The notes under the pieces: model-generated
The model's database searches: none
Told to the model about the DNA's origin: nothing
Seen by the model: the letters and a program-made list of their open reading frames with translations, nothing else
Made by a program: the position numbers and the translations under genes
Source: Utricularia gibba
Lineage: Eukaryota > Plantae > Magnoliophyta
Direction: 5' to 3'
Assembly: GCA_002189035.1 (NCBI GenBank)
Contig: NEEC01000004.1
Span: forward strand, 682,001 to 746,000
Length of the DNA: 64,000 nt
Shown: positions 34,801 to 64,000 of the stretch, one piece after another
How positions within the stretch are numbered: the first letter of the stretch is position 1
Layout of the letters: the number at the start of each line of letters is the position of its first letter

Positions 34801-35013
34801 TTTTCCAATACACACAAAAAACACCAAAATGCAATGCAGCATTTGAGTTTGTCTGACAGTTTTTTTTCCCAACTTCTGCTCTGCAGCATTCCATCACCCC
34901 CTGGTCTAGTTTTCCCCATCCACTTGGAGTGGATAGCAATCCCTTGGAAGGAGTATTGGTGTACATGCCGCGACTCAGTCTATGCCTGCCGATCAAATCC
35001 TCTTCACCCTTAA
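31808..35013 (+). CDS. GPI1: GPI-GlcNAc transferase subunit GPI1/PIG-Q
   Basis: CRLWWP, FLFGWF, KPYWFDRL, HSIWSNLIVDTLLGN, LTNNWLRSGCVWLMGNPAGFKLNTELA, ALWRLFR|GRKYNHLRHRLDSYEYTVDQHVVGSLLF. Ten exons can be joined in frame; stop at 35013. Confidence 0.93.
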
Positions 35014-35246
35014 CGTGTGTGCTCTTTTGCCTTTTGCTGCATTGTTTTAACTGTTGGTAGTGACCATACCCATATTCAGTGCATTATTTGGAATTTGTCT
35101 TGCAACGTAATGTATTATCAATATATATATTATAATGAATATTTATGGTTAATAATTTGAAAATAATAAAAATGTATAGTTGTGTTAAATCAGAAATAAG
35201 CGCTACAGGTGTGGGTGGTGGGATGTAGTGTGTTTGTTCCTACCAA

Positions 35247-37573
35247 ATGCTAGTAAGCCTTTTGAGAAGCACGAAAATCGCCGCCGTTAGTTCTCAGCTG
35301 TTCACTGAGTTTCGCCGTCGCGCCACCTCAGTCTGCTACTCGCATTGTACCGACGTCGAGCCACTCTCAAGAGTAGGGCTGCAATCCCTGGTGCGGCGTT
35401 GCAACATCAACGGCAAGTTCCATAGGCTTCTAAGGAATGCCGTCGCTTCGCCTTCCCTCCTCCTGACCGCTTGCGAAAACCTCAGAAATCATGGACTGGA
35501 GTCTCAATCTGCGCCGCTCACGGCGGAATGGCTGTCGTGTAACTTCTTCTCCATCCACGAACTGTCGTTTCAGCTTGCCCACCAGTTGTTCGACGTTGAG
35601 TCACAATGCGTGCCTATTTTCCCGCTGGGGGTGAAGGTGCGGCACTTCAGTTACCCAATTTGAAGCTTAAAGTTGTGACCCAAGCTGATAGCTTAAAGCC
35701 CTTGAAGGTTATCTATTGATGATAAGGTTCGTCACATTTTCCTACGGTGGCCGGTGGCCGTGTCAATATGGGCCGCCACACAGCTGTTCGGTATTTGAAG
35801 AACACTGTGGAAAATCCCACATGGTGGTTCTGCATTAAATTCGGGAAGGAGCACTTTGAGACTCGCCATGTTGATAAACTCTGTTTGATCCTAGGGGAGA
35901 AGATAGCAGATGATGAACTTATGGATCTTATTAAGAAGTTATTCGAGTTTAAGATTCTGTGTATTGATCTAGGAGATACTGCATGTTTTTCTAGAGGTCT
36001 CCCTCAAGAATGTGATCTGAGTTTGATTTTGATTAACGTTTACTTCAGTTGGTTCGATAAGGAGGTTCAAAGATTGCGCCTTCAAAGGGATGCAGAGAAT
36101 CCCAAGTTCAGCAAACATGAACTTCATGTGGCACATTCGGATGAGGCCCCTATTTTCTATAAGCCCTTGAAGCTTTATGCAGTTAGATATCTCAATGAGA
36201 TATTGGTGATCACAACAGGAACCAAGAAGTTGACATTAGATTTGAAGTCTTGGGCTGTTGATTTTTTGGAACAGAAATTAGACTTGAAGGCGGACCATTC
36301 CGAGACTGTCATACATAGTGCAGTTTCTGAGAAGATTGATTTCATGGGAATGGAGCTTCAAGCAGTTGCGCCTTCAATCCTGCGACCGACCAAGAGTGAA
36401 AAGGCAATCAGGGCGAGGAAGAAGTACTTAAGACAGAAAGAAGTCAGACTCCAAGAGCTGAAAAATGCTAAGGAAAGAAATAGGAAAATGTTGGGAATGA
36501 AGCTTTATAATCATGTGTTCAAGAAACTGAAGCGAAGTAATAGTGCTGTTGCTTTCAAATATGATTTCCACATAGAAAATGAAGTAAGGCAGATTTTCAG
36601 CACTTGGGCTGATGAAGTGGTCGATGAGTACCTGAAATCTATTGATGAAAGATATCAATGGCATCGGCAGCTCTCTGGTGGGGACTTTCTCATGCTTGAG
36701 AGGATCAGGCATCAGTTGCCATCAAAACTTGTTGATGCTTACGACAGCTTCCGGGATCAGATTGACAAGTACTTGAACCCACTTTATGCTCGGAAGAAAC
36801 TGGAGGAAGAAGCACGGAGAAGGGAGGAAGAAGAAGAGGAAATATATGCTAAAAAAACTGTAGATGATCTGACAAAGAAGTGCATCAAAGTAGAGGCACC
36901 CTTGGAACTCATAAAAAAGGCAGTTAGACTCGTCGGTATCACGAATCAAATGGGGCGTCCAAGGCCGCTAAGCTTCCTCACGGTTCTAGATGATGCCAGC
37001 ATTATCCAATGGTATGCAGGCATTGGAAGAAGATGGCTTGATTTCTATTGCTGCTGCCACAACTTCCGTAAGGTTAAAATCATTGTTAGCTACCATCTTC
37101 GTTTTTCCTGCATCCTAACACTAGCAGAGAAACATGAATCTACAAAACGGGAGACCATCAGACACTTCACCAAAGATCTAAAGCTTCTCCACCCCGATGG
37201 AAAAGAAGAGATGCACTTCCCTTCTGAGAGGGAGGTCAAGATGATGGGTGACAGAAATCTTCAAGATCCAAAACCGGTCGACGGATGTCTCACCGTGGCA
37301 CTCGTTAGATTGGCCTCTGATGATTCAAACAGGCGGTGTGTAGCTCATTTCTGTAGCCGAACTGATACAGTTTCTTTCAGGATTTGGTTATTACAGAGGT
37401 ATCTGAAGGTGAATCCATTGAATGGGGTTCAATGGGTTCACGGGATGAGTGCAATCCACGACAACTTGCATAGAAAATGTGCTCCCCTCTGCTGCTATCA
37501 CATGAGTGAATTCTACCTGGGAAGATTGACTTTCCAGGATTTTGATTGTGCCATTCTAGTTGATGATCAGTAA
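35247..37573 (+). CDS. NMAT3: Nuclear-encoded group II intron maturase, nMAT3 type (mitochondrial); indel cluster at 35627-35758
   Basis: LPNLKLKVV, SYGGRVNMGRHTAVRYLKN, RGLPQECDLSLILINVYF, RYLNEILVI (degenerate YADD, 36188-36199), EKAIRARKKYLRQKEVR, domain X GRPRP...IIQWYAGIGRRWLDFYCCCHNF...YHLRFSCILTLAEKH. No introns. The N-terminal ORF (35247-35663) and the 608-aa ORF are out of frame. Confidence 0.9.
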
Positions 37574-47993: not shown

Positions 47994-50775
47994 ATGCATT
48001 GCTTGGTTATAGCCCTTCAACAATCAAAGCTTTGATGAATGCCAACCAACTTTTTTGTTCATCAGCACATATCACATGGCTTTAATTTTTTTTCTTTTTT
48101 GATACCCCTTTGTAACATTATGCACCCCTCTCTTAACCAGGTTGCTCAAGCCCGATGAGGTGAAGAGAGATGGGGCTAGAGGCCGTAGAGATCCCAACGT
48201 TTACCAGGTACTCTCCCGATCCTTTCATTCAAGACTGCTTATAGTTATAGCAAATGAAGTCACTTGTTACTCATTCCATATGCGTAAATATCTTCTCACC
48301 CTCCACGCACACATGTATAGAGGAGTGCTATATGAATGCAATGCGTCCTTCCTTGGAACCTAGAATACATGGGGCGACCCAATGTGCTATCCGTAAAAGA
48401 GACACAGACAATGCATGATGTCTGTGGTCATGATGCATGTTCATTCAGCCTATGTGGCCCCATCTCAAACGCTTTTGCTCAATTCATACACCCCTAACTG
48501 CCGATGATGAAGATTAGACCTTCTTCTTTGACTCCCTTTTTCCTAGTTGATTAGTATTCATGTTAATAAAGTTTAAACATACTCCGTAATAATGATGATA
48601 TTAAATTGATCGACTTAGACACAATTTTTACACTATGTTTCACTTGCATTATAAAGTTGGCATATTCATTTGGATGGGTTTAGGGATAGCGAGCAGCACA
48701 TGTAGAGCCTGAACTACAGGTATCTTTCATTTCTTGTTTCTTTCTTTCCCTTGGCTTTATTTCAAAAGATGGCTATCCATATCACATTTCTTTATAGTTT
48801 TCTATGGATATATCTACCTCACAAGTTCCCGAAATAGAGCAGAATTTAGAAAATCCCATAAGCATCTTCAATGGATATGATTGCCACTGCATTTTTAAAA
48901 AGATGAATTATTCATGGAAATATAGAAATGTAAGTTTCTCAACCCATGGCATGCCATCTATGCTTTCATTTTATTGAATTGTAAAAAAAAAAATAGATTT
49001 TGTTTTTTATTCTTCAATCTCTATATTTCATATTTCTATTGAAATCGTTGTAAAATAATTATATGTATTTATTAACTTTGTTTGACTTAAATGTTACATT
49101 TGAAAATTTTAACTATTTGAATTAATATATTATTTCATTAAATATTATTTCTTTGTCATTGTTAAATTTCAAATTATCTATGACTAATATTTCTCACTTT
49201 CGCTGTCGTTTTCAGAGATGGGAATTTAGGGTCATTTTTTTTCTTTCACATTTTAATAATTTTAATTTTAAAAAATAAATTTATTTTGATTGAAAATACC
49301 AAAATGAAAAGAAGGTGAAAGCCAATATTTTAAAAATAGTTTAATTTTAGATTGAATTTTTTTTTATAATGAGTTGAGCCTGATGAAACTCACTATGAAT
49401 ATATTATAAAAATAAAAATAATTATATAAATTTAATATTTTAAAGTTTTTATTTTTTAAAAAAAATTACGGAATCTAATTGAATCGAGTTAAATTGGGTG
49501 AAACCCATGATTTCAAAACACTCACGGAAATAAAAATTGGTTAGTGCGCAGGGAGGTGAATACTGGGGGAATCTTTGGTTAATAACTATATCATATCTTG
49601 TTATTTAATGTGAGGAGTTGTAGGGGACATGCGATAGAAGTATATGAGGGAATAAAGAATAATTGGCTAGGCAAAGGAATAAAGAATAAAGCGCTACAGC
49701 TGCTGTCTTCCCCCCGACCCAATTAAATAGATTATTAAAACAAAAAACTTCTTCTTAGTCATATTTCCCCCCTTGAAATGACGTCCTAAATTATCGTGTC
49801 GTGTCGTCTAACACCGGAAAAAATGGCATCGATGTCCGTAAAAGGTTGTCGGCTAAAGTAATTCAAAAAAACAAAAAGCAGAGAATGGAGTCTAACGTGG
49901 AGTGTCTGGTGTAGGACGAAGATGCGGGGACTGAGGAATGAGGGAGTTCGGCTAATCCCCCTTTCAAAGAGCAACTGGGAAGTCAGTCATTCAGTGTGTT
50001 TGTGTTTCAGTTGCAGACGGGTATTTTGATAGGAAATGTAGGAATCAAAAACATCCAAAAGATTTGGCTAAAGCTATGCTTGGTTTTGATTAAAGGTGTG
50101 ATTAAACATTGAGACAAGCATAGGGTCTACATCTGTCATGGGATGCCACCTGCGTATTCATTTCCTCGAGGAAGATGGGTTCCACGTCTTGAAAGTTGTT
50201 CAATGAAAGACCTTTGTTTTTGTCAAGTGAACAACTTGAAAGTTGTTTTTGTAAGTGGGTTGTGGAGTTGGGGTTGCAGGTTTGGTATTAATTATGCAAT
50301 GAAGGTTGTATTCTGTAGAACGTGCCTGTAATTGTTTATTATTGTGTCGTTGAAGGGAGTCGTTGGATTTGAGTGTGATGGATGGAGGGTTCTTGCTTTT
50401 TGCTGCTTTGCGTCGTGCACTTGCAGTGGCTTCCGTTTCCATTTTCAATCACCCCCCGGTCTATTCTAGTTTCAATGGCAGTTTCCCGTGAGAAAAAATG
50501 GCATCTTTTTCACGGTGAAACTCTTAAATATGCAACTGAATTTGATTGACATTTGCTCCGGACATCTGGCCCGTGAATCCCTTGGAAATCTTTTCTCCGT
50601 TCGTTGGCCTCCTATGACCCCTGCCTTTACTTATTCTCTTTCCCGCTCTGTGATACTTGCTTTCTCCTCCTGAAAGTTGAGGATTTTTGGCCTTTTTTTT
50701 TTGTTCAGTTTTGGGAGGAGTTGCTTACCTTCTTGGGCATCTAAAAACTCACCCCCCCCCCCCCCGGGAAGAAAA

Positions 50776-53526
50776 ATGCGGTTTTTGGGTTTGTTGGGCA
50801 TATTGCTTCTTGGGTTGCGACTTGTGATTTCGCAGGTTGCGAACGATCAGGAGATACTGCTAGCGATTCGGGAGGAATTTAAGGTTCCTGGGTGGGGTGG
50901 AAACAGTTCAGATTATTGCGCTTGGTCCGGCATTTCTTGTAATGGCTCTTCACTCGTTGAGAGGCTTGACCTTTCTAAGCTTAGATTGCAAGGTAACCTT
51001 ACTCTGTTTTACCAACTTAAATCACTCAAATGGCTTGATCTTTCTTTCAACAACTTTCACGGGAGTATTGCTACTGCTTTCGGAGATCTGTCTGCGCTTG
51101 AGTTTCTGGATTTATCATTCAATAAGTTGGATGGGGAGATCCCCGTTGGGTTGGGTAAGCTTAAAAATCTCAGAGCCTTGAATCTTTCTGGAAACTTTCT
51201 TGTGGGGGTGATGCCAGATGAATTGGAAGGTTTGCAGAAGTTGCAGGATTTGCAAGTGTTTGCAAATAGGTTGACTGGTTCCATCCCGTTGTGGGTTGGT
51301 AATTTAACCCATCTGCGTATATTTACAGCCTACGAGAATAAGTTGAGTGGTGCCATTCCTGAAAAGTTGGGGTCTGTCTCCCAACTTGAAGTCCTGAATC
51401 TTCACTCTAATCAACTAGAGGGACCGATCCCTGAAAACATCTTTGCTCTGGAGAAGCTTGAAACGTTGGTTCTAACACAGAATCGACTAACGGGATACAT
51501 TCCCAGATCGATTGGGAACTGTAGGCAACTTTCGAGCATCAGAATTGGTCATAATAATTTGATAGGAAGTGTTCCTATTGAAATTGGCAGTGTTAGCAGC
51601 CTCACCTACTTTGAAGCAAACAACAACAATCTTTCTGGGGAGATTGTGCCTGCTTTTTCAAGATGCTCCAATCTCACTCTCTTGAATTTAGCCTCGAATG
51701 GGTTCACTGGATCGGTTCCATTGGAGTTCAGTTTACTGTCTAATTTACAGGAGCTCATTGTATATGAGAACAGTTTGTCTGGGGACATCCCTACATCAGT
51801 TCTCAAGGTGAAGAATTTGAACAAGCTTGATTTAAGCCATAACAGGTTTAGTGGTACTATTCCGAGGAGCATTTGCAGCGCATCCAGGCTGCAGTTCTTG
51901 TTGCTTGGTCACAATTGCATCTCTGGGGAGATCCCATATGAGATTGGAAACTGCACAAAACTACTTGAGTTGCATCTTGGTAGTAACCGCCTAAGTGGAA
52001 GTATTCCTCCTGAGATTGGTCATATAAGGAACTTGCAGATTTCTCTGAATTTGAGCTTCAATCATCTCCAAGGCCAACTACCTGAAGAGCTGGGGAGATT
52101 AGACAAGTTGGTTTATTTAGATGTTTCCAATAATCAGCTCAGTGGCAGCATTCCATCTGCATTAAAAGGCATGCTCAGTTTAATAGAGGTGAATTTCTCA
52201 AATAATCACTTATCTGGCCCTATACCATCCTTTTCACCGTTTCAAAAGAGCTCCAGTTCAAACTTTCTTGGAAACAGGGGGCTCTGTGGGGAGCCTTTAA
52301 GCATTTCTTGTGGAGGCTTGGGTTATCCTTCCGGTGATGATTCTTACTATCACAAGGGTTCTTACCGCGTCACATTAGCTGTTATAGGTACTGGTTTGGC
52401 TGTTTTTGCGTCTGTGGCTGTGATTGTTTTGCTCTTCATGATGAGGGAGAAACGAGAAGCAGCCACAAAAGATGTGGCTGCTGTTGCTAGTGTTGACACT
52501 ACTAACAATCCAGTGATTTTAGCAGGAGATGTGTTCAGTGAAAACCTCAGGCAAGCTATAGACTTCGAAGCTGTTCATAAAGCAATACTGAAAGAAACGA
52601 ATTTGGTCAGCAGCGGCACATTCAGCCTTGTTTACAAAGCTGAGATGCCTTCTGGGGTGGTCGTATCTGTTAGGAAACTCGTATCAATGGATAAATCCAT
52701 ACTCAGTCACCGGAACAAGATGGCTAGAGAGGTAGAAAAGTTGAGCAAGCTCACGCATGGTAACTTATTGCGGCCAATTGGGTATGTTTTTTCTGAGGAC
52801 GGCGTGTTCGTGTTGCATGAGCATTTTTCAAATGGAACACTTGCAAACTTTCTTCATGATTCGCCAAAGAAGCCGGAATACAAGCCTGATTGGCCAACCA
52901 GGCTCTCCATTGCCATTGGAGTAGCACAAGGAATGGCCTTTCTCCACCATGTAAGCATCATTCACCTGGATATTTCCTCTGGGAACGTTGTTTTAGATTC
53001 AACCTTGAATCCCTTGGTAAGCCAAGTTGAAATCTCGAGGCTTCTGGATCCATCGAGGGGCACAGCAAGCATCAGTGCTGTAGCTGGTTCCTTTGGCTAC
53101 ATCCCACCAGGTAGATCTTCCTCTGGCCTGCATTCCTATCACCCTTTGCATAATGATGTGCTTCACTAACATCCCGTTCCGCCTCGTTCTTTGTCGACAG
53201 AATATGCATACACGATGCAAGTTACGGCGCCGGGCAACGTCTACAGCTACGGTGTCATTTTGCTGGAGCTACTAACTTCACAGCTACCAGTTGATGAAGC
53301 TTTTGGTGAAGGGGTCGACCTGGTGAAATGGGTTCAGAGTGCTCCATCCAGAGGGGAAACTCCTGAGCAGATACTTGATCCAGGGCTAAGCACCCACTCG
53401 TTTTCATGGAGGAAAGAGATGCTTTCTGCCCTTAAAGTTGCATTGCTCTGCACTGATCGGATACCAGCTAAAAGACCCAAAATGACGAAGGTCGTGGAAA
53501 TGCTTCAGGAAATCAAGCAAAATTAG
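50776..53526 (+). CDS. PXC3: LRR receptor-like kinase PXC3 type (exons 50776-53110, 53201-53526)
   Basis: Signal peptide, Cys-pair cap (DYCAWSGISC), many LRRs, GNRGLCG, TM VTLAVIGTGLAVFASVAVIVLLFMM, kinase IIHLDISSGNV, EISRLLDPSRGTASISAVAGSFGYIPP|EYAYTMQVTAPGNVYSYGV. Confidence 0.93.
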
Positions 53527-56337: not shown

Positions 56338-57005
56338 TCATGGCCCATCATCGCCGTCTCCAATCAAGTTGCAGATATCAGAACATTCAGACAAGCTACA
56401 AGTTTTTTGTGTATGAAAGACAACAGAGACGAAGAGTGTCAAGCAAGATTTATGTCGTTAGCTGGACCCAAAGTAGAAGATGAGGATAACCTACCAGTAT
56501 TTTCTACTGCGGAACCCATCCTTGAAAACAACAAGAGGCCTGTAGATATGAAGACTTGTAAATATGATGAAAATCACTAGCATCACCAAATCTAGCAGCT
56601 TCTACAAATCACCACATACACCAACAATGAAGAAACGGCACAAAATTTCATTGGCATTTACTTTCTGATATTCAGAGGACCTTCACCAGGAGACCCAAAG
56701 CCACCCTGAATGCAAGTGCCAACACATTTACTGGTACAAGTCTCAGCTTTCCGTGATCTGGGCTTCTGGATTCTGTACGCTTTCCTGCAATCTTTCTGCT
56801 CCGAAGTGCAGACGGAGGACAATGTCTGGGGGATGTTCGACAGCGTCTCCTCCGGGAGCTGTGGCGTCTCCTGTTGAATGGCGCTAGCTGATAACACCAG
56901 CGCGGCTGTTGCAGCCACCACAGCTGCAGCTATTTGGTGGGACGAACAGAGAAAGCTGGACGGTTTCTTGGCTAGTTCCGTTTTGCATCCAATGGGGCAT
57001 AACAT
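56338..57005 (-). CDS. Conserved uncharacterised Cys-rich plant protein, probably plastid/lumen-targeted (exons 56662-57005, 56495-56539, 56338-56395)
   Basis: Transit-like N-terminus and AAAVVAATAALVLSASA hydrophobic stretch, then ETLSNIPQTLS..C....C....IQKPRSRKAETCTSKCVGTCIQGGFGSPGEGPLNIR|KPLVVFKDGFRSRKYC|LSECSDICNLIGDGDDGP*. All junctions are in frame. Confidence 0.85.
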
Positions 57006-58645: not shown

Positions 58646-61600
58646 ATGGATACAGAAAACGGGGATCCTGGTTCGAAGTTGGGAGACTATGAAGTGATAG
58701 AGCCTATTGAGAGCGGTTCTTTTGCTGCTAAGTTTCTTGTTCTCCACAAGACTGAAAATAGAAGGTAAGAAGCGGCGCCTTAGTTGTTATCTTTCGTGAT
58801 TATGTGCTTAAAGGGTGTTTAGCCAAGACGCATGACTCTACAAGGTTTCTAATTGATAGCGTTCGCCACAGAAATTTTGAGGGAATATAGATTACATTCA
58901 AGCAAGGAGTCCTTTCAACTGTTTAATGCTTTCTACATTATAAGCAAGAAAAATAGGTTCCTAGGAGTAATGTTCTTACATTATCACGTGCAGGTATATG
59001 TTAAAGAAAATTAGCCTCTCCAAGCAAACTGATAAAGTCAAGCGCACAGCTCATCAAGAGGTTGGTTCTACCATATCTTTTGTTATTTTGCACGGATGGT
59101 ATAAGACCATTGTGATGGTAGCATGATGCATGGTCATTACTTTGGCTGGAAATGAATCAAATAATACTTGAGTGTTATTGAACCGGTTTTGGATGACTTT
59201 TAGCTTCACTGCAATGCTGTGGCCCTTTTCACAGGTTGATTTAATCACAAAACTGAGGCATCCGTATATCGTTGAATTTAGAGATGCCTGGGTTGATGCG
59301 GTATTGTGCTATCTCCTAAACCTTTAAAGTCCAGTCCCTTTTTCTGGAAAATTTTGATGTTTGGCAGGTGTTGCATAGATTGTGAATATAATGCTAAAGG
59401 GGGCTTGTTTGATTTGGACTCTTTTGTAGGATAACCACGTATACATCATCACAAACTATTGTGAGCGTGGAGATATGTAAGGACTTTTGTTTATTAGCTA
59501 AAGATGGGATGGAATCTTATAGAATCTTCTTCATATTGTATCTTCTCATTTTCATTTTCGCAGGTATGAGATAATGAGGAGGGCAAAGGGATCATATTTC
59601 CCTGAGGAGGTAATTCAGTTGTTCTGAAACCAAGTTTTGTACTTCTTCATGTTTTGTAACCCACCGTCTACGTGAATGCCTTAACATTTCCCAGGTGGTT
59701 TGCAAGTGGCTGACGCAGATGCTACTAGCTGTTGACTATCTTCATTCAAACCGTGTTCATCATAGGAACTTGAAGGTTTTGATCTCTGATTGGCAAGGGC
59801 TAGCGTTCTCTTGTGTTGACGTAGTTTTCTCTAAATTGTTGTCTTCCCGTTTTGCAGCTGTCTAACATATTTGTCACAAAGGAAAACGATATCCAGATTG
59901 GTAAGAAAAAGAGGAAAAATTTTCAAAAGAGATTTTTCAGTCCTTCATCTGGTATATCAGGTCTCTTGGTTGCATGAACTGCAGGGGATGTTGCATTATC
60001 AAGGCTTCTTGATGAGGAAGGATTCCCTTCTTCGGTATGAAAAGATGCTTCTTCTTGGAGCTGATATTATCTCATCCTTCTTAAACTGAAGATCAATGAC
60101 TCAATGCAGGTCCACTATTTGATGCCTGAGCTGATTGCTGGTGCTCCATACAGCTACAAATCAGACATATGGTCTCTAGGTAATAATCCTTCAGTTCATG
60201 ATAGCCATGATTCTATATACTCCCAACACTTCTTTTTGTTTTTTTCGTTCTTTGCAGGTTGTTGCATCTTTGAGATTGCTGCACGCCAACAAGCTTTCAA
60301 AGCATCTGTAAGTCAAATATTCATTTCATCTGGTTTTGATCCTTCAAATATGCAGTGTCTGTTCATCCATGGTGCCGAAAAGTGAAAGTGAACCCTGAAA
60401 TGTAACATTAACAGGACATGACTGGCCTCATCGACAAGATAAACAGATCCGTGATTTCTCCACTCCCAATCATATACTCTGCTAATCTGTAAGTGTCGTT
60501 TCTGTTGATCTTGACACATAAAATCCTAATGTTTGTGGTGTTTGAAAAGAAATCAGAGAAAGTTTCCTGAAGTAGCATACTGGTCTTTGTAAACACAGGA
60601 AACAGATCATTAAGAGCATGCTAAGGAAGAGCCCGGAACACAGGCCAAGTGTGAGTGTTTCTCCACTTTCAGCATATTCATCTCTGTTTCTCTAGAAGAG
60701 CTGAATCTTGGTTTTCATTTACAGGCTGCAGAGCTGTTAAGGCAGCCCCATTTGCAGCCTTTCCTTCTCCATTGTCGTGATCCATCTCCCACCTTCCTTC
60801 CGGTGAAATCCCCTTCCCCGAAAAATGCAAGCGGTAAGAAAGCTAAGACGCCTAGCAGCTCAGGTTCCAAGAACATCCGGCACAGAGAAACAAAACCAAA
60901 GCAGAAAGAGCTGCTTCCATTTTTTGATGAAATCAAGAATATGCAAGTCCCAAGTCTATTGGATCCAGATCTTTCAATAGATGGCATACTGGAGACCAAA
61001 AGAGTCGATCCCACGAGCTATTCCGGCAAGATTTCAACTGACAGTGAGGATTCAAAAAGTGGGGACGCAGTTTTTGAGACTAATACCGAGTACAGAGATG
61101 ATGATAGCAAGGCGTGCTCATCTTCATCCAAGGAAAAAGCTGCACCAGTGAAGGATGTGAAAGCTGAAAAACTTGCAGCATCCGAAGAATGTGAATTTAA
61201 GAACGAAACAGGTCCCAATTTGGAGCAAAGATGTAGCAGCTCTGAGTTCATGGATCATGCAGCCCTTGAAAGGTATACCGGAGAACCTGCTATCAAGTCA
61301 GGTTCCAGTAAAAAGGTGGTGTCTGATAATTCCGGTTCGGTTCTATCCAACGAACTGGCAAATGCTCGGAGCTGTGAGCGGAGCAATGGCGCATCATCAG
61401 GGGTGATCTTTTCAAGCCAAGTCGGCAACGTTGGCCAAACGAGAGCAGATACACATGCAGCCCCAAACCCAAAGGAGAAACATGCCATACCGGCTGAAGT
61501 TCAAGAGACATCCAACTTAGCTTTGCACCCAAGAGTTGCTGCGACAGAGGGAGAGGACAGTGCAAGTAACATCCAGAAACCAGTGCCCCAGAGAGCTGAT

Positions 61601-61771
61601 GCATTAGAATCCTTGCTAGAGTTATGTGCTGACTTGCTGAGACAAGACAAACTTGATGAACTCACTGGAATACTCAAGCCCTTTGGACACGAAATAGTTT
61701 CATCCAGAGAAACAGCCATCTGGCTGACAAAGAGCCTCATGAACGCAAAGAAGATGACCAAAGACTCTTAG
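58646..61771 (+). CDS. NEK7: NIMA-related kinase NEK7-like, predicted pseudokinase, 13 exons
   Basis: [74 protein letters not shown]|[34 protein letters not shown], plant-NEK C-terminal motif [14 protein letters not shown]...[19 protein letters not shown]. All 12 GT-AG junctions keep frame. Confidence 0.9.
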
Positions 61772-62515: not shown

Positions 62516-64000
62516 ATGCTCGCCGTGCTTGGGTTTTGATTGTTTTCTTTGCTATTGTTCGTCATAAATGGAGGAATGCGGCGGCGAAGGAGGAGGAGAT
62601 TTTGAGGCTTGTAGCTATGGCTTCCGAAGAAGAGGCGGAAATTGCGATGCGAGAAAAGGATGAATCTTCTGAATCTCCTCCTCCGGACCAGCTGACCCAG
62701 CTTCAGCAGCGTTATTATTGTGCCGTTTGTCTTTCCGCCACCACCACTAGGTGCTCTCAGTGCAAGGCTGTAAGATACTGGTGAGCGCTTTTTGTACTTT
62801 ATTTGTGTTTATGCATCGTTTTGGCTGATTGAATGTAAACTGATATGGGAACGGATCTGTAGCTTGCAATTCTATATATTCTCGATTTAAAGTTAATCAA
62901 TTTTCAGTTACTTTATTTGAGATTATGGTCTAGTTTGTGTACTTCTTTTTTGAAGTTTTGTTCTTTGAGCTCAAAAAGAGTGTTGTTCTAATATATGATG
63001 TTTTATTAATTGCATTATATGAACGTTATTCAGTCTAGACTCCTCTTTTTGATAGCTCGGGAAAGTGTCAGATAATTCACTGGAGGAAAGGTCACAAGTA
63101 TGAGTGTCGACCTGCAGCTCTATCTCGTGTTAGCATTGGAAATGAATGTTTCGCGGCAGGTGTTTCTCGTAATCAGGATGAGATGCCTATTAATGATGAA
63201 GAAAGACATCTTCTTGCAGATCATGGAATTGTAAATTTCAAAACTTCGAGTGATTCAGTGCCTTCGTTTTCCTATTCCTCGGAACAAAGTGAAGTCGCTT
63301 CAACCAGTGAGATTCATGACTCAGATTCTCAATTTGGGTCAGTCCAAACAAGTTTTGAAACCACCTATTCTCATTCTTCTGAACCTACGGACTCCAATGT
63401 AGTCGATACCCACAAGCAGTCTGTATTGAATGGTGCACATTATGTACCCTTGAGTAAGAGAACTGATGGTACAGTGTTAGAAGAGCTTGTCCTGGAAAGC
63501 TCTGATGTGAGGAGTATGCCGCCTTATAGTTCTATGAGAACTTTTTCTTCATCAGAAGCTCAAAGAGCTCGACCGTTTTCAGATAGTGGAGATGTGATAA
63601 AATCCTTTTACAGGGGGGGATCAGGCAAGCGTCAAGTAATAGATACGGAGCTAAAGAATTCTTACTGTTCAAGACCTGCAAGCATTGCATCCTCTATACA
63701 GAACTGGAAAAACGAGGCTCAAATGTCCATTTCTAAGGAATCGCGACCTGTGTTGTATAGGAGTTCAGGAAATGATCAAAATAATAGCAGGAAGCCTGAT
63801 ATATTGCGTTCGTTTATTCATGAGACAGGGCCAAAGTCTAGTAACAAAGGTCTGAAAACATTCCGAAAATTTGTAGAAAACTTCAAGGCTTCAAAGCAAT
63901 CAACCCCCTATATAGTTGATATTGGCAAGAACTCGAAAGACATTTACAGCAAACAGGTTATCATCCTTTATTGTGTCGTCAAGTTTCATTAATCGAACAG
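62516..64000 (+). CDS. UBP17: Ubiquitin-specific protease UBP17-like with MYND zinc finger (5' part; runs off the window); apparent 1-nt deletion near 62535
   Basis: IVRHKWRNAAAKEEEILRLVAMASEE, MYND CAVCLSATTTRCSQCKAVRYC|SGKCQIIHWRKGHKYEC (exon 2 starts 63056, donor at 63957). The ATG at 62516 hits TGA after a T4 run, whereas T5 would give MLAVLGFLIVFF. Confidence 0.88.

What the first reader, a model, noticed from the sequence alone, without database searches (positions are those of the whole stretch)
58646..60179. NEK7-like gene has become a pseudokinase while keeping all 13 exons in frame
Seen: four catalytic elements are altered. The Gly loop is IESGSFAA (canonical IGRGAFGA), the catalytic HRD is HRN (AAC at 59767-59769), DFG is DVA (59987-59995), and the activation/P+1 segment VVGTPNYMCPE is shortened to VHYLMPE, losing GT. 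The beta3 Lys, alphaC Glu, catalytic-loop Lys/Asn, the DxG Asp, all splice sites, a 349-codon last exon and the plant NEK C-terminal motif are preserved. Established: Asp-to-Asn at HRD removes the catalytic base (as in HER3), and plant NEKs act on cortical microtubules and dimerise through their C-termini. Inference: a maintained scaffold or dominant-negative NEK. These are substitutions and an in-frame deletion, so they are not the indel-type errors seen elsewhere in the window. This is the best candidate for undescribed biology here.
Basis: partly seen in the sequence, partly recalled or inferred. Interest (0 to 1): 0.72.

Follow-up and report, generated by a model that had tools for sequence, protein, structure and literature searches.

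The report
Catalytically dead but conserved plant NEK kinase
A bladderwort-family plant carries an intact, 13-exon microtubule-kinase (NEK) gene that has lost its catalytic machinery yet appears to have stayed under selection, and relatives of this gene in other plants have lost the same catalytic residue repeatedly.

Summary
Window 58646-61771 (+) holds a 13-exon, all GT-AG, 603-codon plant NEK gene. Twelve of its 13 exon lengths equal those of six mapped orthologues. Exon 9 is 12 nt shorter, which removes the VGTP codons. The glycine loop reads [11 protein letters not shown] is HRN and DFG is DVA. The beta3 Lys, alphaC Glu, catalytic-loop Lys and Asn, DFG Asp, APE Glu and C-terminal NEK motifs are kept.

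A neighbouring gene (nMAT3) places the genome in Lentibulariaceae, a fast-evolving lineage. The NEK protein as a whole is no more accelerated than nMAT3 (2.3x against 2.2x). The kinase domain alone is 3.5x.

Kinase-domain dN/dS on this branch is about 0.14, against 0.09 between active orthologues. Changes at conserved columns concentrate in catalytic motifs (10/22 against 17/115, p=0.002). This fits a maintained pseudokinase better than a decaying gene.

Synteny makes it the orthologue of a Lamiales clade whose other sampled members all keep HRD and DFG, so the loss is lineage-specific. Loss of the HRD Asp recurs at least six times in this subfamily. Salvia HRN copies show dN/dS of 0.12-0.16.

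The mechanism (non-catalytic partner or scaffold) is inferred. The scan also noted a second NEK (HGN) elsewhere in this genome.

The parts
58646..61771 (+). Whole coding region of the NEK gene: 13 exons, 603 codons plus stop
   Evidence: One search gives the exon chain, all GT-AG, with an open 1812-nt CDS. One search gives 55% full-length identity to Lamiales 'Nek6-like' proteins.
58646..58764 (+). Exon 1, which holds the degenerate glycine loop IESGSFAA (58706-58729). G1 is changed to E and G3 to A; G2 is kept.
58994..59060 (+). Exon 2, with the retained beta3 Lys (YMLKKI, 58995-59012) and the alphaC Glu codon at its 3' end
59695..59775 (+). Exon 6, which ends in HRNLK. The catalytic Asp is replaced by Asn (AAC at 59767-59769).
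   Evidence: One search aligns this exon codon by codon with Striga and Erythranthe, where the codon is GAT.
59858..59900 (+). Exon 7, with the retained catalytic-loop Asn (LSN)
59985..60034 (+). Exon 8, where DFG is replaced by DVA (59987-59995). The Asp is kept, Phe becomes Val and Gly becomes Ala.
60110..60179 (+). Exon 9, which is 70 nt where five of six mapped orthologues have 82 nt (Erythranthe B has 79). A 12-nt in-frame deletion removes VGTP from the activation/P+1 segment. Nearby changes are N to H, M to L and C to M. The APE Glu is kept.
60725..61771 (+). Last exon, encoding the C-terminal region. Three blocks are conserved (60746-60823, 60992-61063, and the NEK C-terminal motif at 61586-61753), with a fast-evolving middle part between them.
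   Evidence: The motif blocks were 80-89% identical to the Genlisea fragment.
56338..56857 (-). Small neighbouring gene, also adjacent to the Genlisea NEK fragment. It serves as a microsynteny marker and is not part of the NEK gene.
   Evidence: 85% identity over 65 aa to L001 1085-1279.
35247..37570 (+). nMAT3 gene, used to place the genome and calibrate its rate. It is a synteny anchor and not part of the NEK gene.

Best explanation
This is the positional orthologue of the Lamiales 'A-clade' NEK5-type kinase (named 'Nek6-like' by NCBI) in a Lentibulariaceae genome. It has become a pseudokinase.

Four catalytic elements are changed. The catalytic base is lost (HRD to HRN). The DFG Phe and Gly are changed (DVA), which alters the regulatory spine and the DFG hinge. 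Two of the three glycines of the ATP-phosphate loop are replaced. Four residues, including the GT of the P+1/activation segment, are deleted, which should remove normal substrate positioning.

The kinase fold appears to have been kept by purifying selection. So have most nucleotide-pocket residues (beta3 Lys, alphaC Glu, catalytic-loop Lys and Asn, DFG Asp) and the C-terminal plant-NEK motifs.

The most likely mode of action is inferred, not shown. The protein would still reach cortical microtubules and NEK partners through its C-terminal region, and would act without catalysis. It could be a regulatory partner, a scaffold or a competitor of active NEKs such as the NEK6 type.

Shown here: gene structure, motif states, rate and dN/dS pattern, synteny, and recurrence of Asp loss in the subfamily. 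Inferred: absence of activity, possible nucleotide binding, partner binding, microtubule localisation and present-day expression.
For: **Gene integrity**
- The 13-exon ORF is intact and all introns are GT-AG.
- Exon lengths equal those of the orthologues except for the 12-nt in-frame loss in exon 9.

**Lineage and rates**
- nMAT3, 21 kb away, groups with Genlisea at 99* support.
- From the core-Lamiales node the nMAT3 branch is about 2.2x the mean of the other taxa. The full NEK protein is about 2.3x. The kinase domain alone is about 3.5x. The excess acceleration is therefore modest and confined to the kinase domain.

**Selection**
- Kinase-domain dN/dS against A-clade orthologues is 0.08-0.18.
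- A three-taxon estimate for the window's branch gives dN 0.135 and dS 0.98, so omega is about 0.14. Striga against Erythranthe gives 0.09.
- At columns at least 95% conserved in 30 canonical orthologues, the model differs at 10 of 22 catalytic-motif positions and at 17 of 115 others (Fisher p=0.0024). Most of the non-motif changes are conservative.
- The catalytic-motif codons carry roughly 0.14 substitutions per site (hand count from the codon table). Under neutral drift of that size over the whole CDS, simulation gives P(no stop) of about 7e-4 and P(all splice sites and the ATG intact) of about 8e-4.

**C-terminal region**
- The C-terminal blocks are conserved with Genlisea, Striga and Erythranthe.

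**Support from relatives**
- All six Salvia B-clade copies share HRN. Two of them, at dS 0.22-0.29, show kinase-domain omega of 0.12-0.16. HRN NEKs of this subfamily are therefore kept by selection.

**Literature**
- Kinase-dead NEK6 still localises to microtubules.
- The NEK6 C-terminal region is mainly responsible for that localisation.
- NEK6 interacts with NEK4 and NEK5 (all three points from PMC5552743).
Against: - There is no expression or read evidence. The protein database holds no close relative of this genome, so the absence of matching transcripts there says nothing either way.
- dS to the nearest available orthologues is 1.0-2.0, close to saturation, so omega is approximate.
- The branch mixes time before and after the loss of catalysis. 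A recent full loss of function cannot be excluded from omega alone. A neutral phase covering about 5% of the branch would fit.
- No other Lentibulariaceae kinase-domain sequence was available. The Genlisea contig starts inside exon 12, so the changes cannot be dated.
- Motif-site dN (about 0.2) is well below dS. The loss is therefore either fairly recent or the remaining motif residues are still constrained.
- Arabidopsis NEK5 is expressed in xylem, columella, root hairs and guard cells (PMC13714603). By my own knowledge, not tested here, such tissues are reduced in bladderworts. That could favour relaxation rather than a new function.
- The phylogeny alone cannot place the gene in clade A or clade B (AU p=0.29 and 0.38).
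Confidence: 0.6

Rival explanations
1. It is a recently inactivated gene on its way to becoming an unprocessed pseudogene. Catalysis was lost, the gene no longer does anything, and no stop or frameshift has struck yet.
For: - Four catalytic elements are hit at once.
- No expression evidence could be obtained.
- The kinase domain is somewhat more accelerated than the rest of the protein and than nMAT3 (3.5x against 2.2-2.3x).
- Branch omega of 0.14 would tolerate a short neutral phase.
- The tissues where Arabidopsis NEK5 is expressed (PMC13714603) are, by my own knowledge, reduced in this plant family.
Against: - At least 12 nucleotide changes plus one indel (hand count) sit in about 28 motif codons. 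The other conserved positions changed far less, and mostly conservatively (p=0.0024). That pattern needs selection on the rest of the gene while the motifs decayed.
- The same amount of drift across the whole gene would almost surely have produced stops or broken splice sites.
- The only indel is in frame.
- The C-terminal motifs are intact.
- HRN paralogues in Salvia are demonstrably under purifying selection.
Confidence: 0.2
2. It is an atypical kinase that is still weakly active. The Lys, Glu, Asn and DFG Asp that hold ATP and Mg are kept, so slow or specialised phosphotransfer may persist despite HRN. From memory, HER3 has been reported to retain weak activity of this kind.
For: - The beta3 Lys, alphaC Glu, catalytic-loop Lys and Asn, DFG Asp and APE Glu are retained.
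- Motif-site dN stays well below dS.
- Asp-to-Asn changes recur in the subfamily with otherwise canonical domains, as in Salvia B. Those HRN proteins may retain some catalytic role.
Against: - This copy also lacks two glycine-loop glycines, the DFG Phe and Gly, and four residues of the P+1/activation segment including GT.
- By established kinase structure-function knowledge, the combination makes ordered substrate phosphorylation unlikely.
Confidence: 0.12
3. It is an assembly or sequencing artefact, and the real gene is a canonical NEK.
For: The assembly shows at least one likely indel error in the same window: a frameshift inside the single-exon nMAT3 gene near 35564-35624. Reads could not be consulted.
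Against: - The differences are many separate substitutions in different exons plus a 12-nt in-frame deletion. They are not single-base homopolymer indels.
- The ORF is unbroken.
- The changes are accompanied by many ordinary lineage-specific substitutions throughout the gene.
Confidence: 0.03

Closest known systems
Plant NEK5-type NIMA-related kinases. Sources name them 'NIMA-related kinase 5' or 'Nek6-like'. From memory, the Arabidopsis representative is At3g20860.
   Same: - Same domain order, with an N-terminal NEK kinase domain and a C-terminal region ending in the conserved plant-NEK motif.
- Same 13-exon structure, with exon lengths equal except exon 9.
- Kinase-domain identity of 72% to Salvia.
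- Same chromosomal neighbourhood as the A-clade copy.
   Different: - HRD is HRN, DFG is DVA, the glycine loop is ExGxxA, and VGTP is deleted.
- All other sampled A-clade members keep HRD and DFG.
- The disordered middle of the C-terminal region is longer.
HRN/HGN NEKs of the same subfamily in other plants: Salvia B copies, Handroanthus (HRN plus DSG), Erythranthe B (HGN plus VGSP), Orobanche (HGN plus ARPP), and Caryophyllales sequences P0067, P0103 and P0112
   Same: - Same subfamily and the same loss of the catalytic Asp.
- The genes are otherwise intact.
- The Salvia copies are under purifying selection.
   Different: - They arose independently, with at least six state changes on the tree.
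- Most keep DFG, the glycine loop and the GT segment, so the window's gene is the most degenerate sampled.
- The Lamiales examples (Salvia, Handroanthus, Erythranthe, Orobanche) lie in paralogue clade B, and the window's gene is the A-clade orthologue by position.
HER3/ErbB3 pseudokinase
   Same: It has Asn in place of the HRD Asp while keeping the ATP-binding Lys and the DFG Asp. It works as a non-catalytic partner of active family members. This is established knowledge cited from memory.
   Different: It is an animal receptor tyrosine kinase with no homology beyond the kinase fold. Its partner mechanism (asymmetric dimer) has not been shown for NEKs.
Giardia NEK pseudokinases
   Same: They are NEK-family proteins lacking catalytic residues and associated with microtubule structures. 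The papers listed (PMC7521801, PMC12538575) deal with the Giardia Nek family and kinome.
   Different: They come from a protist-specific expansion of about 198 Neks with different accessory domains. They are unrelated to the plant C-terminal motif and represent independent losses.
Arabidopsis kinase-dead NEK6 allele ibo1-1 (E177R)
   Same: It is a catalytically dead plant NEK that still localises to microtubules (PMC5552743). This is the behaviour proposed here.
   Different: It is an induced loss-of-function allele in a different NEK subgroup. It does not complement the nek6 mutant and accumulates to lower levels. It is not a naturally maintained form.

Membership tests
Plant NIMA-related kinase (NEK) family, NEK5-type ('Nek6-like') subfamily | N-terminal protein kinase domain most similar to NEK kinases | tested here: met
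   One search gives full-length BLASTP hits at 55% identity to Lamiales Nek6-like proteins. One search gives 72% identity over the kinase domain. One search shows that the orthologue's kinase domain best matches human NEK1, NEK2 and NEK7 structures.
Plant NIMA-related kinase (NEK) family, NEK5-type ('Nek6-like') subfamily | Conserved exon-intron structure of the subfamily | tested here: met
   There are 13 exons, and 12 of the 13 lengths equal the series shared by the six mapped orthologues.
Plant NIMA-related kinase (NEK) family, NEK5-type ('Nek6-like') subfamily | Conserved C-terminal plant-NEK motif and upstream conserved blocks | tested here: met
   alignment. The blocks lie at 60746-60823, 60992-61063 and 61586-61753.
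Plant NIMA-related kinase (NEK) family, NEK5-type ('Nek6-like') subfamily | Orthology to the Lamiales A clade rather than the B clade | tested here: inconclusive
   The tree cannot decide (AU p=0.29 for A and 0.38 for B). Synteny favours A. nMAT3 lies near the A-type NEK in Striga (same scaffold, 370 kb apart) and in Paulownia (locus tags 53 apart). It shares a chromosome-scale contig with the A-type NEK in Salvia miltiorrhiza and with an unplaced copy in Buddleja. The Gpi1-nMAT3 adjacency is kept in the window.
Pseudokinase (sequence definition: lacks at least one of the beta3 Lys, HRD Asp or DFG Asp) | Loss of at least one of the three catalytic residues | tested here: met
   The HRD Asp is Asn (AAC at 59767-59769). 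The Lys and the DFG Asp are retained.
Pseudokinase (sequence definition: lacks at least one of the beta3 Lys, HRD Asp or DFG Asp) | Absence of phosphotransfer activity | not testable with these tools
   This needs a recombinant protein assay.
Functional (selected) gene as opposed to a decaying pseudogene | Open reading frame, start codon and splice sites intact | tested here: met
   One search shows by simulation that this is unlikely under neutral drift of the size seen at the motif codons.
Functional (selected) gene as opposed to a decaying pseudogene | dN/dS well below 1 on its own branch | tested here: met
   One search gives a three-taxon estimate of about 0.14 for the kinase domain. dS is near saturation, so the value is approximate.
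Functional (selected) gene as opposed to a decaying pseudogene | Transcribed and correctly spliced | not testable with these tools
The protein database holds no close relatives of this genome.

The most novel reading that the evidence does not exclude
NEK5-type proteins of flowering plants may work mainly without catalysis, as microtubule-bound partners of active NEKs. If so, their catalytic Asp is repeatedly dispensable, which would explain at least six Asp/Asn switches across Lamiales and Caryophyllales. In this Lentibulariaceae genome both subfamily copies would then be catalytically dead yet retained: this one with HRN, DVA and the deletion, and a second one noted by the scan with HGN. That would make the species a natural experiment showing that the subfamily's essential role is non-enzymatic.
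Probability: 0.25. Interest if true: 0.7.

Novelty: new member of a known kind. Interest (0 to 1): 0.5.

Why it matters
Plant NEKs are studied as tubulin kinases that shape cortical microtubule arrays and cell growth direction. The roles of NEK5 and NEK7 are poorly understood, and their mutants show only weak phenotypes (PMC13714603).

A naturally maintained, multiply inactivated NEK would point to a non-catalytic function for this subfamily, such as partner regulation, scaffolding or competition on microtubules. The recurrent loss of the catalytic Asp in otherwise conserved relatives points the same way. The Salvia copies show this clearly, with dN/dS of 0.12-0.16.

The relatives in Erythranthe and Salvia occur in plants that, to my knowledge, can be studied genetically, so the idea could be tested there. 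In three full-text searches of the held library I found no paper describing plant NEK pseudokinases.

Tried and rejected
**Reads.** There is no check of the bases, of expression or of splice junctions.

**Spliced model.** The joined protein has no reference. It was therefore not handed to any search, family-scan, structure-prediction or atlas tool. Only the last exon was searched by reference. The other exons encode 14-39 residues and are too short for those tools. The joined sequence was built only inside scripts from window.fa, for alignment, trees and dN/dS. No structure model of this protein was made.

**Genlisea.** The only Lentibulariaceae relative in the database (P0028) is a fragment whose contig begins inside exon 12. 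Its kinase motifs are unknown.

**C-terminal dN/dS.** Synonymous sites are saturated or the region is poorly alignable in the disordered middle. These values were not used.

**Clade placement by tree.** This was inconclusive because of the long branch.

**Immediate microsynteny.** Comparison with the Erythranthe A and B loci and the Striga A locus within 10 kb found no shared neighbours beyond the NEK gene itself. Larger-scale synteny through nMAT3 was used instead.

**Neighbouring genes.** Pfam scans of the small neighbouring gene and of the downstream gene's large exon gave nothing.

**Literature.** One search timed out.

**Explanations rejected.**
- A processed pseudogene is ruled out because the introns are retained.
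- A misannotated exon 9 acceptor does not explain the deletion. An in-frame AG 18 nt upstream would add INDSMQ and would not restore VGTP.
Full report
**1. What is in the sequence**

I rebuilt the gene from the window. It has 13 exons on the + strand from the ATG at 58646 to the stop at 61769-61771. All 12 introns are GT-AG. The CDS is 1812 nt and encodes 603 residues, with no internal stop or frameshift.

- The glycine loop IESGSFAA lies at 58706-58729.
- The HRN Asn codon AAC lies at 59767-59769.
- DVA lies at 59987-59995.
- The activation/P+1 segment SSVHYLMPE spans the exon 8/9 junction.

These residues are retained: the beta3 Lys (YMLKKI), the alphaC Glu (HQEV), the catalytic-loop Lys and Asn (HRNLKLSN), the DFG Asp, the APE Glu and the DIWSLG helix.

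I mapped six orthologous proteins exactly onto their genomic loci. These were Striga A, Erythranthe A and B, Salvia hispanica, Salvia divinorum and Perilla. Their shared exon lengths are 119, 67, 66, 47, 46, 81, 43, 50, 82, 50, 74 and 52, followed by a variable last exon. Three of them differ by one codon in a single exon. The window matches the shared series except at exon 9, which is 70 nt. Codon alignment shows a clean 12-nt in-frame deletion just after the acceptor, which removes VGTP. The intron upstream holds no remnant that would restore it.

**2. Handling of the spliced model**

The joined protein has no reference. I therefore searched only the last exon by reference. I left out every step that would hand the joined protein to a search, family-scan, atlas or structure tool. 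The joined sequence was used only inside scripts that read window.fa.

**3. Which genome and which gene**

The last exon finds only Lamiales proteins of about 560-600 aa as its best matches. Their identity is no more than 45% over the full length, and there is no self hit.

A single-exon neighbour lies 21 kb upstream, the mitochondrial intron maturase nMAT3. It groups with Genlisea aurea at 99* support inside core Lamiales. The genome is therefore a member of Lentibulariaceae. That it is probably a bladderwort is my inference from the equally long sister branch.

This family is a genome-wide long branch. Measured from the core-Lamiales node:
- The window's nMAT3 path is 0.50, against a mean of 0.23 for 15 other taxa (about 2.2x).
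- The full NEK protein gives 0.87 against 0.38 (about 2.3x).
- The kinase domain alone gives 0.36 against 0.10 (about 3.5x, or 4.9x against A-clade members only).

Most of the gene's divergence is therefore a lineage effect. The gene-specific excess is modest, about 1.5-2x, and confined to the kinase domain.

**4. Orthology**

Core Lamiales carry two paralogue clades of this NEK subfamily. Sources name the members 'Nek6-like', 'NIMA-related kinase 5' and, rarely, 'Nek7'.

The tree cannot place the long-branched window gene in either clade (AU p=0.29 for A and 0.38 for B). Position can:
- In Striga hermonthica the A-type NEK and nMAT3 lie 370 kb apart on one scaffold.
- The Gpi1-nMAT3 adjacency seen there is kept in the window at 34873-35055.
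- In Paulownia the A-type gene and nMAT3 have locus tags 53 apart.
- In Salvia miltiorrhiza (A-type) and in Buddleja (a copy the tree leaves unplaced) the NEK shares a chromosome-scale contig with nMAT3.

The Genlisea NEK fragment is next to the same small gene that lies next to the window's NEK, at 56338-56857 and in a different orientation.

I conclude that the window gene is the A-clade orthologue. Every other sampled A-clade member keeps HRD and DFG. The degeneration therefore arose on the Lentibulariaceae lineage.

**5. Is it maintained?**

Pairwise kinase-domain dN/dS against A-clade orthologues is 0.08-0.18. A three-taxon decomposition gives dN 0.135 and dS 0.98 for the window's own branch, so omega is about 0.14. 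Between the two active orthologues it is 0.09. dS is close to saturation, so the value is approximate. If dS is underestimated, the true omega is lower still.

I looked at the 137 kinase-domain columns that are at least 95% conserved in 30 canonical orthologues. The window differs at 10 of 22 positions in the glycine loop, catalytic loop, DFG and activation/P+1 segment. It differs at only 17 of 115 positions elsewhere (Fisher p=0.0024). Most of the changes elsewhere are conservative, such as E/D, K/R, I/V and Y/F. Random decay would not sort changes this way. Loss of constraint on catalysis alone, with the fold still constrained, would.

The motif codons can serve as an internal clock. By my hand count from the codon table they carry about 0.14 substitutions per site plus one indel. 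Simulated neutral drift of that size over the whole CDS leaves no stop codon in only 7e-4 of trials. It would leave all 24 splice dinucleotides and the ATG intact with probability about 8e-4.

The C-terminal blocks are conserved with Genlisea, Striga and Erythranthe.

None of this proves present-day function. A short recent neutral phase remains possible, covering about 5% of the branch.

**6. The wider family pattern**

Loss of the HRD Asp is not unique to this gene. The following all lack it:
- Handroanthus (HRN plus DSG)
- all six Salvia B copies (HRN)
- Erythranthe B (HGN plus VGSP)
- two Orobanche species (HGN plus ARPP)
- a Caryophyllales group (HRN)

On a 41-row tree, at least six Asp/Asn state changes are needed.

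Two Salvia copies that inherited HRN from a common ancestor differ by dS 0.22-0.29. Their kinase-domain omega is 0.12-0.16. NEKs of this subfamily without the catalytic base are therefore kept by purifying selection. This independently makes the maintained-pseudokinase reading of the window gene more plausible.

The scan's own notes list a second NEK with HGN elsewhere in this genome (s1-227956). I could not check it.

**7. How it most likely works**

From general kinase knowledge:
- Asn in place of the HRD Asp removes the catalytic base.
- Val in place of the DFG Phe weakens the regulatory spine.
- Ala in place of the DFG Gly stiffens the hinge.
- Loss of G1 and G3 of the glycine loop impairs phosphate positioning.
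- Deletion of VGTP removes the GT that ties the P+1 loop to the catalytic loop.

Together these make ordinary substrate phosphorylation very unlikely. The retained Lys, Glu, Asn and Asp leave nucleotide binding possible.

In Arabidopsis, kinase-dead NEK6 still decorates microtubules. The NEK6 C-terminal region is mainly responsible for that localisation. NEK6 binds NEK4 and NEK5 (PMC5552743). NEK5-GFP shows filamentous and punctate patterns in xylem, root hairs and guard cells (PMC13714603).

The best-supported mechanism is therefore a microtubule- and NEK-binding protein that acts without catalysis, as a partner, scaffold or competitor. This is an inference and nothing here tests it.

**8. 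Comparison with what is known, and novelty**

Pseudokinases are a well-known kind. HER3 is the classic HRN case (from memory). NEK pseudokinases are well documented in Giardia (papers listed).

I ran three full-text searches of the held library. None returned a paper describing a plant NEK pseudokinase. A fourth search timed out. That library lacks most subscription journals.

I rate this a new member of a known kind. The recurrent Asp loss across the subfamily is the more interesting part.

**9. Limits**

- No reads could be consulted.
- No within-family orthologue with a kinase domain was available.
- No structure model was made.
- dS is near saturation.
- The same window contains a probable assembly indel in nMAT3. 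The NEK differences are substitutions and a 12-nt in-frame deletion, which is not that error type.

Noticed in passing
window 35247-37570 (+): The single-exon nMAT3 gene is split by a frameshift near 35564-35624. Paulownia residues 1-132 align in frame 3 and residues 123-771 align in frame 2.
   Followed up: partly
L001 28-789 (Genlisea aurea KE528193.1) against window 60599-61771: The Genlisea copy has no intron between exons 12 and 13, so an intron has been lost. Its small downstream neighbour corresponds to window 56338-56857 on the opposite side and strand of the NEK gene, which indicates a local rearrangement between the two genera.
   Followed up: partly
Proteins P0013-P0015, P0303, P0310, P0330 (Salvia); P0005; P0012/P0017; P0023; P0067/P0103/P0112: Loss of the catalytic HRD Asp (HRN or HGN) recurs in this NEK subfamily, with at least six state changes on the tree. 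The Salvia HRN copies have kinase-domain dN/dS of 0.12-0.16. Parsimony within the B clade would even allow Asn-to-Asp reversals.
   Followed up: partly
window 60092-60109: An in-frame AG acceptor lies 18 nt upstream of exon 9. Using it would add six codons (INDSMQ) without a stop. It would not restore the VGTP segment. Whether it is used is unknown.
   Followed up: no
P0011 (Erythranthe guttata A copy), L003 exon 1: This otherwise canonical A-clade NEK has a glycine loop GRSAFAA, with G2 changed to S and G3 to A. Glycine-loop erosion is therefore not confined to the window's gene.
   Followed up: no
window 34873-35055 (+) and 35247-37570 (+): The last exon of a Gpi1-like gene sits directly upstream of nMAT3, as it does in Striga hermonthica. 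The block is syntenic despite roughly 15-fold compaction: NEK and nMAT3 are 21 kb apart here and 370 kb apart in Striga.
   Followed up: partly
window 50677-53169 (+): A long ORF encodes an LRR receptor-like kinase, with LRR repeats and a partial kinase-domain match in Pfam. It was not examined further.
   Followed up: no
window about 62570-64000 (+): The gene downstream of the NEK begins with a Cys-rich segment that looks like a MYND-type zinc finger by eye. Pfam gave no hit on its large exon, and my first-exon frame was wrong in two calls, so its identity is not established.
   Followed up: no
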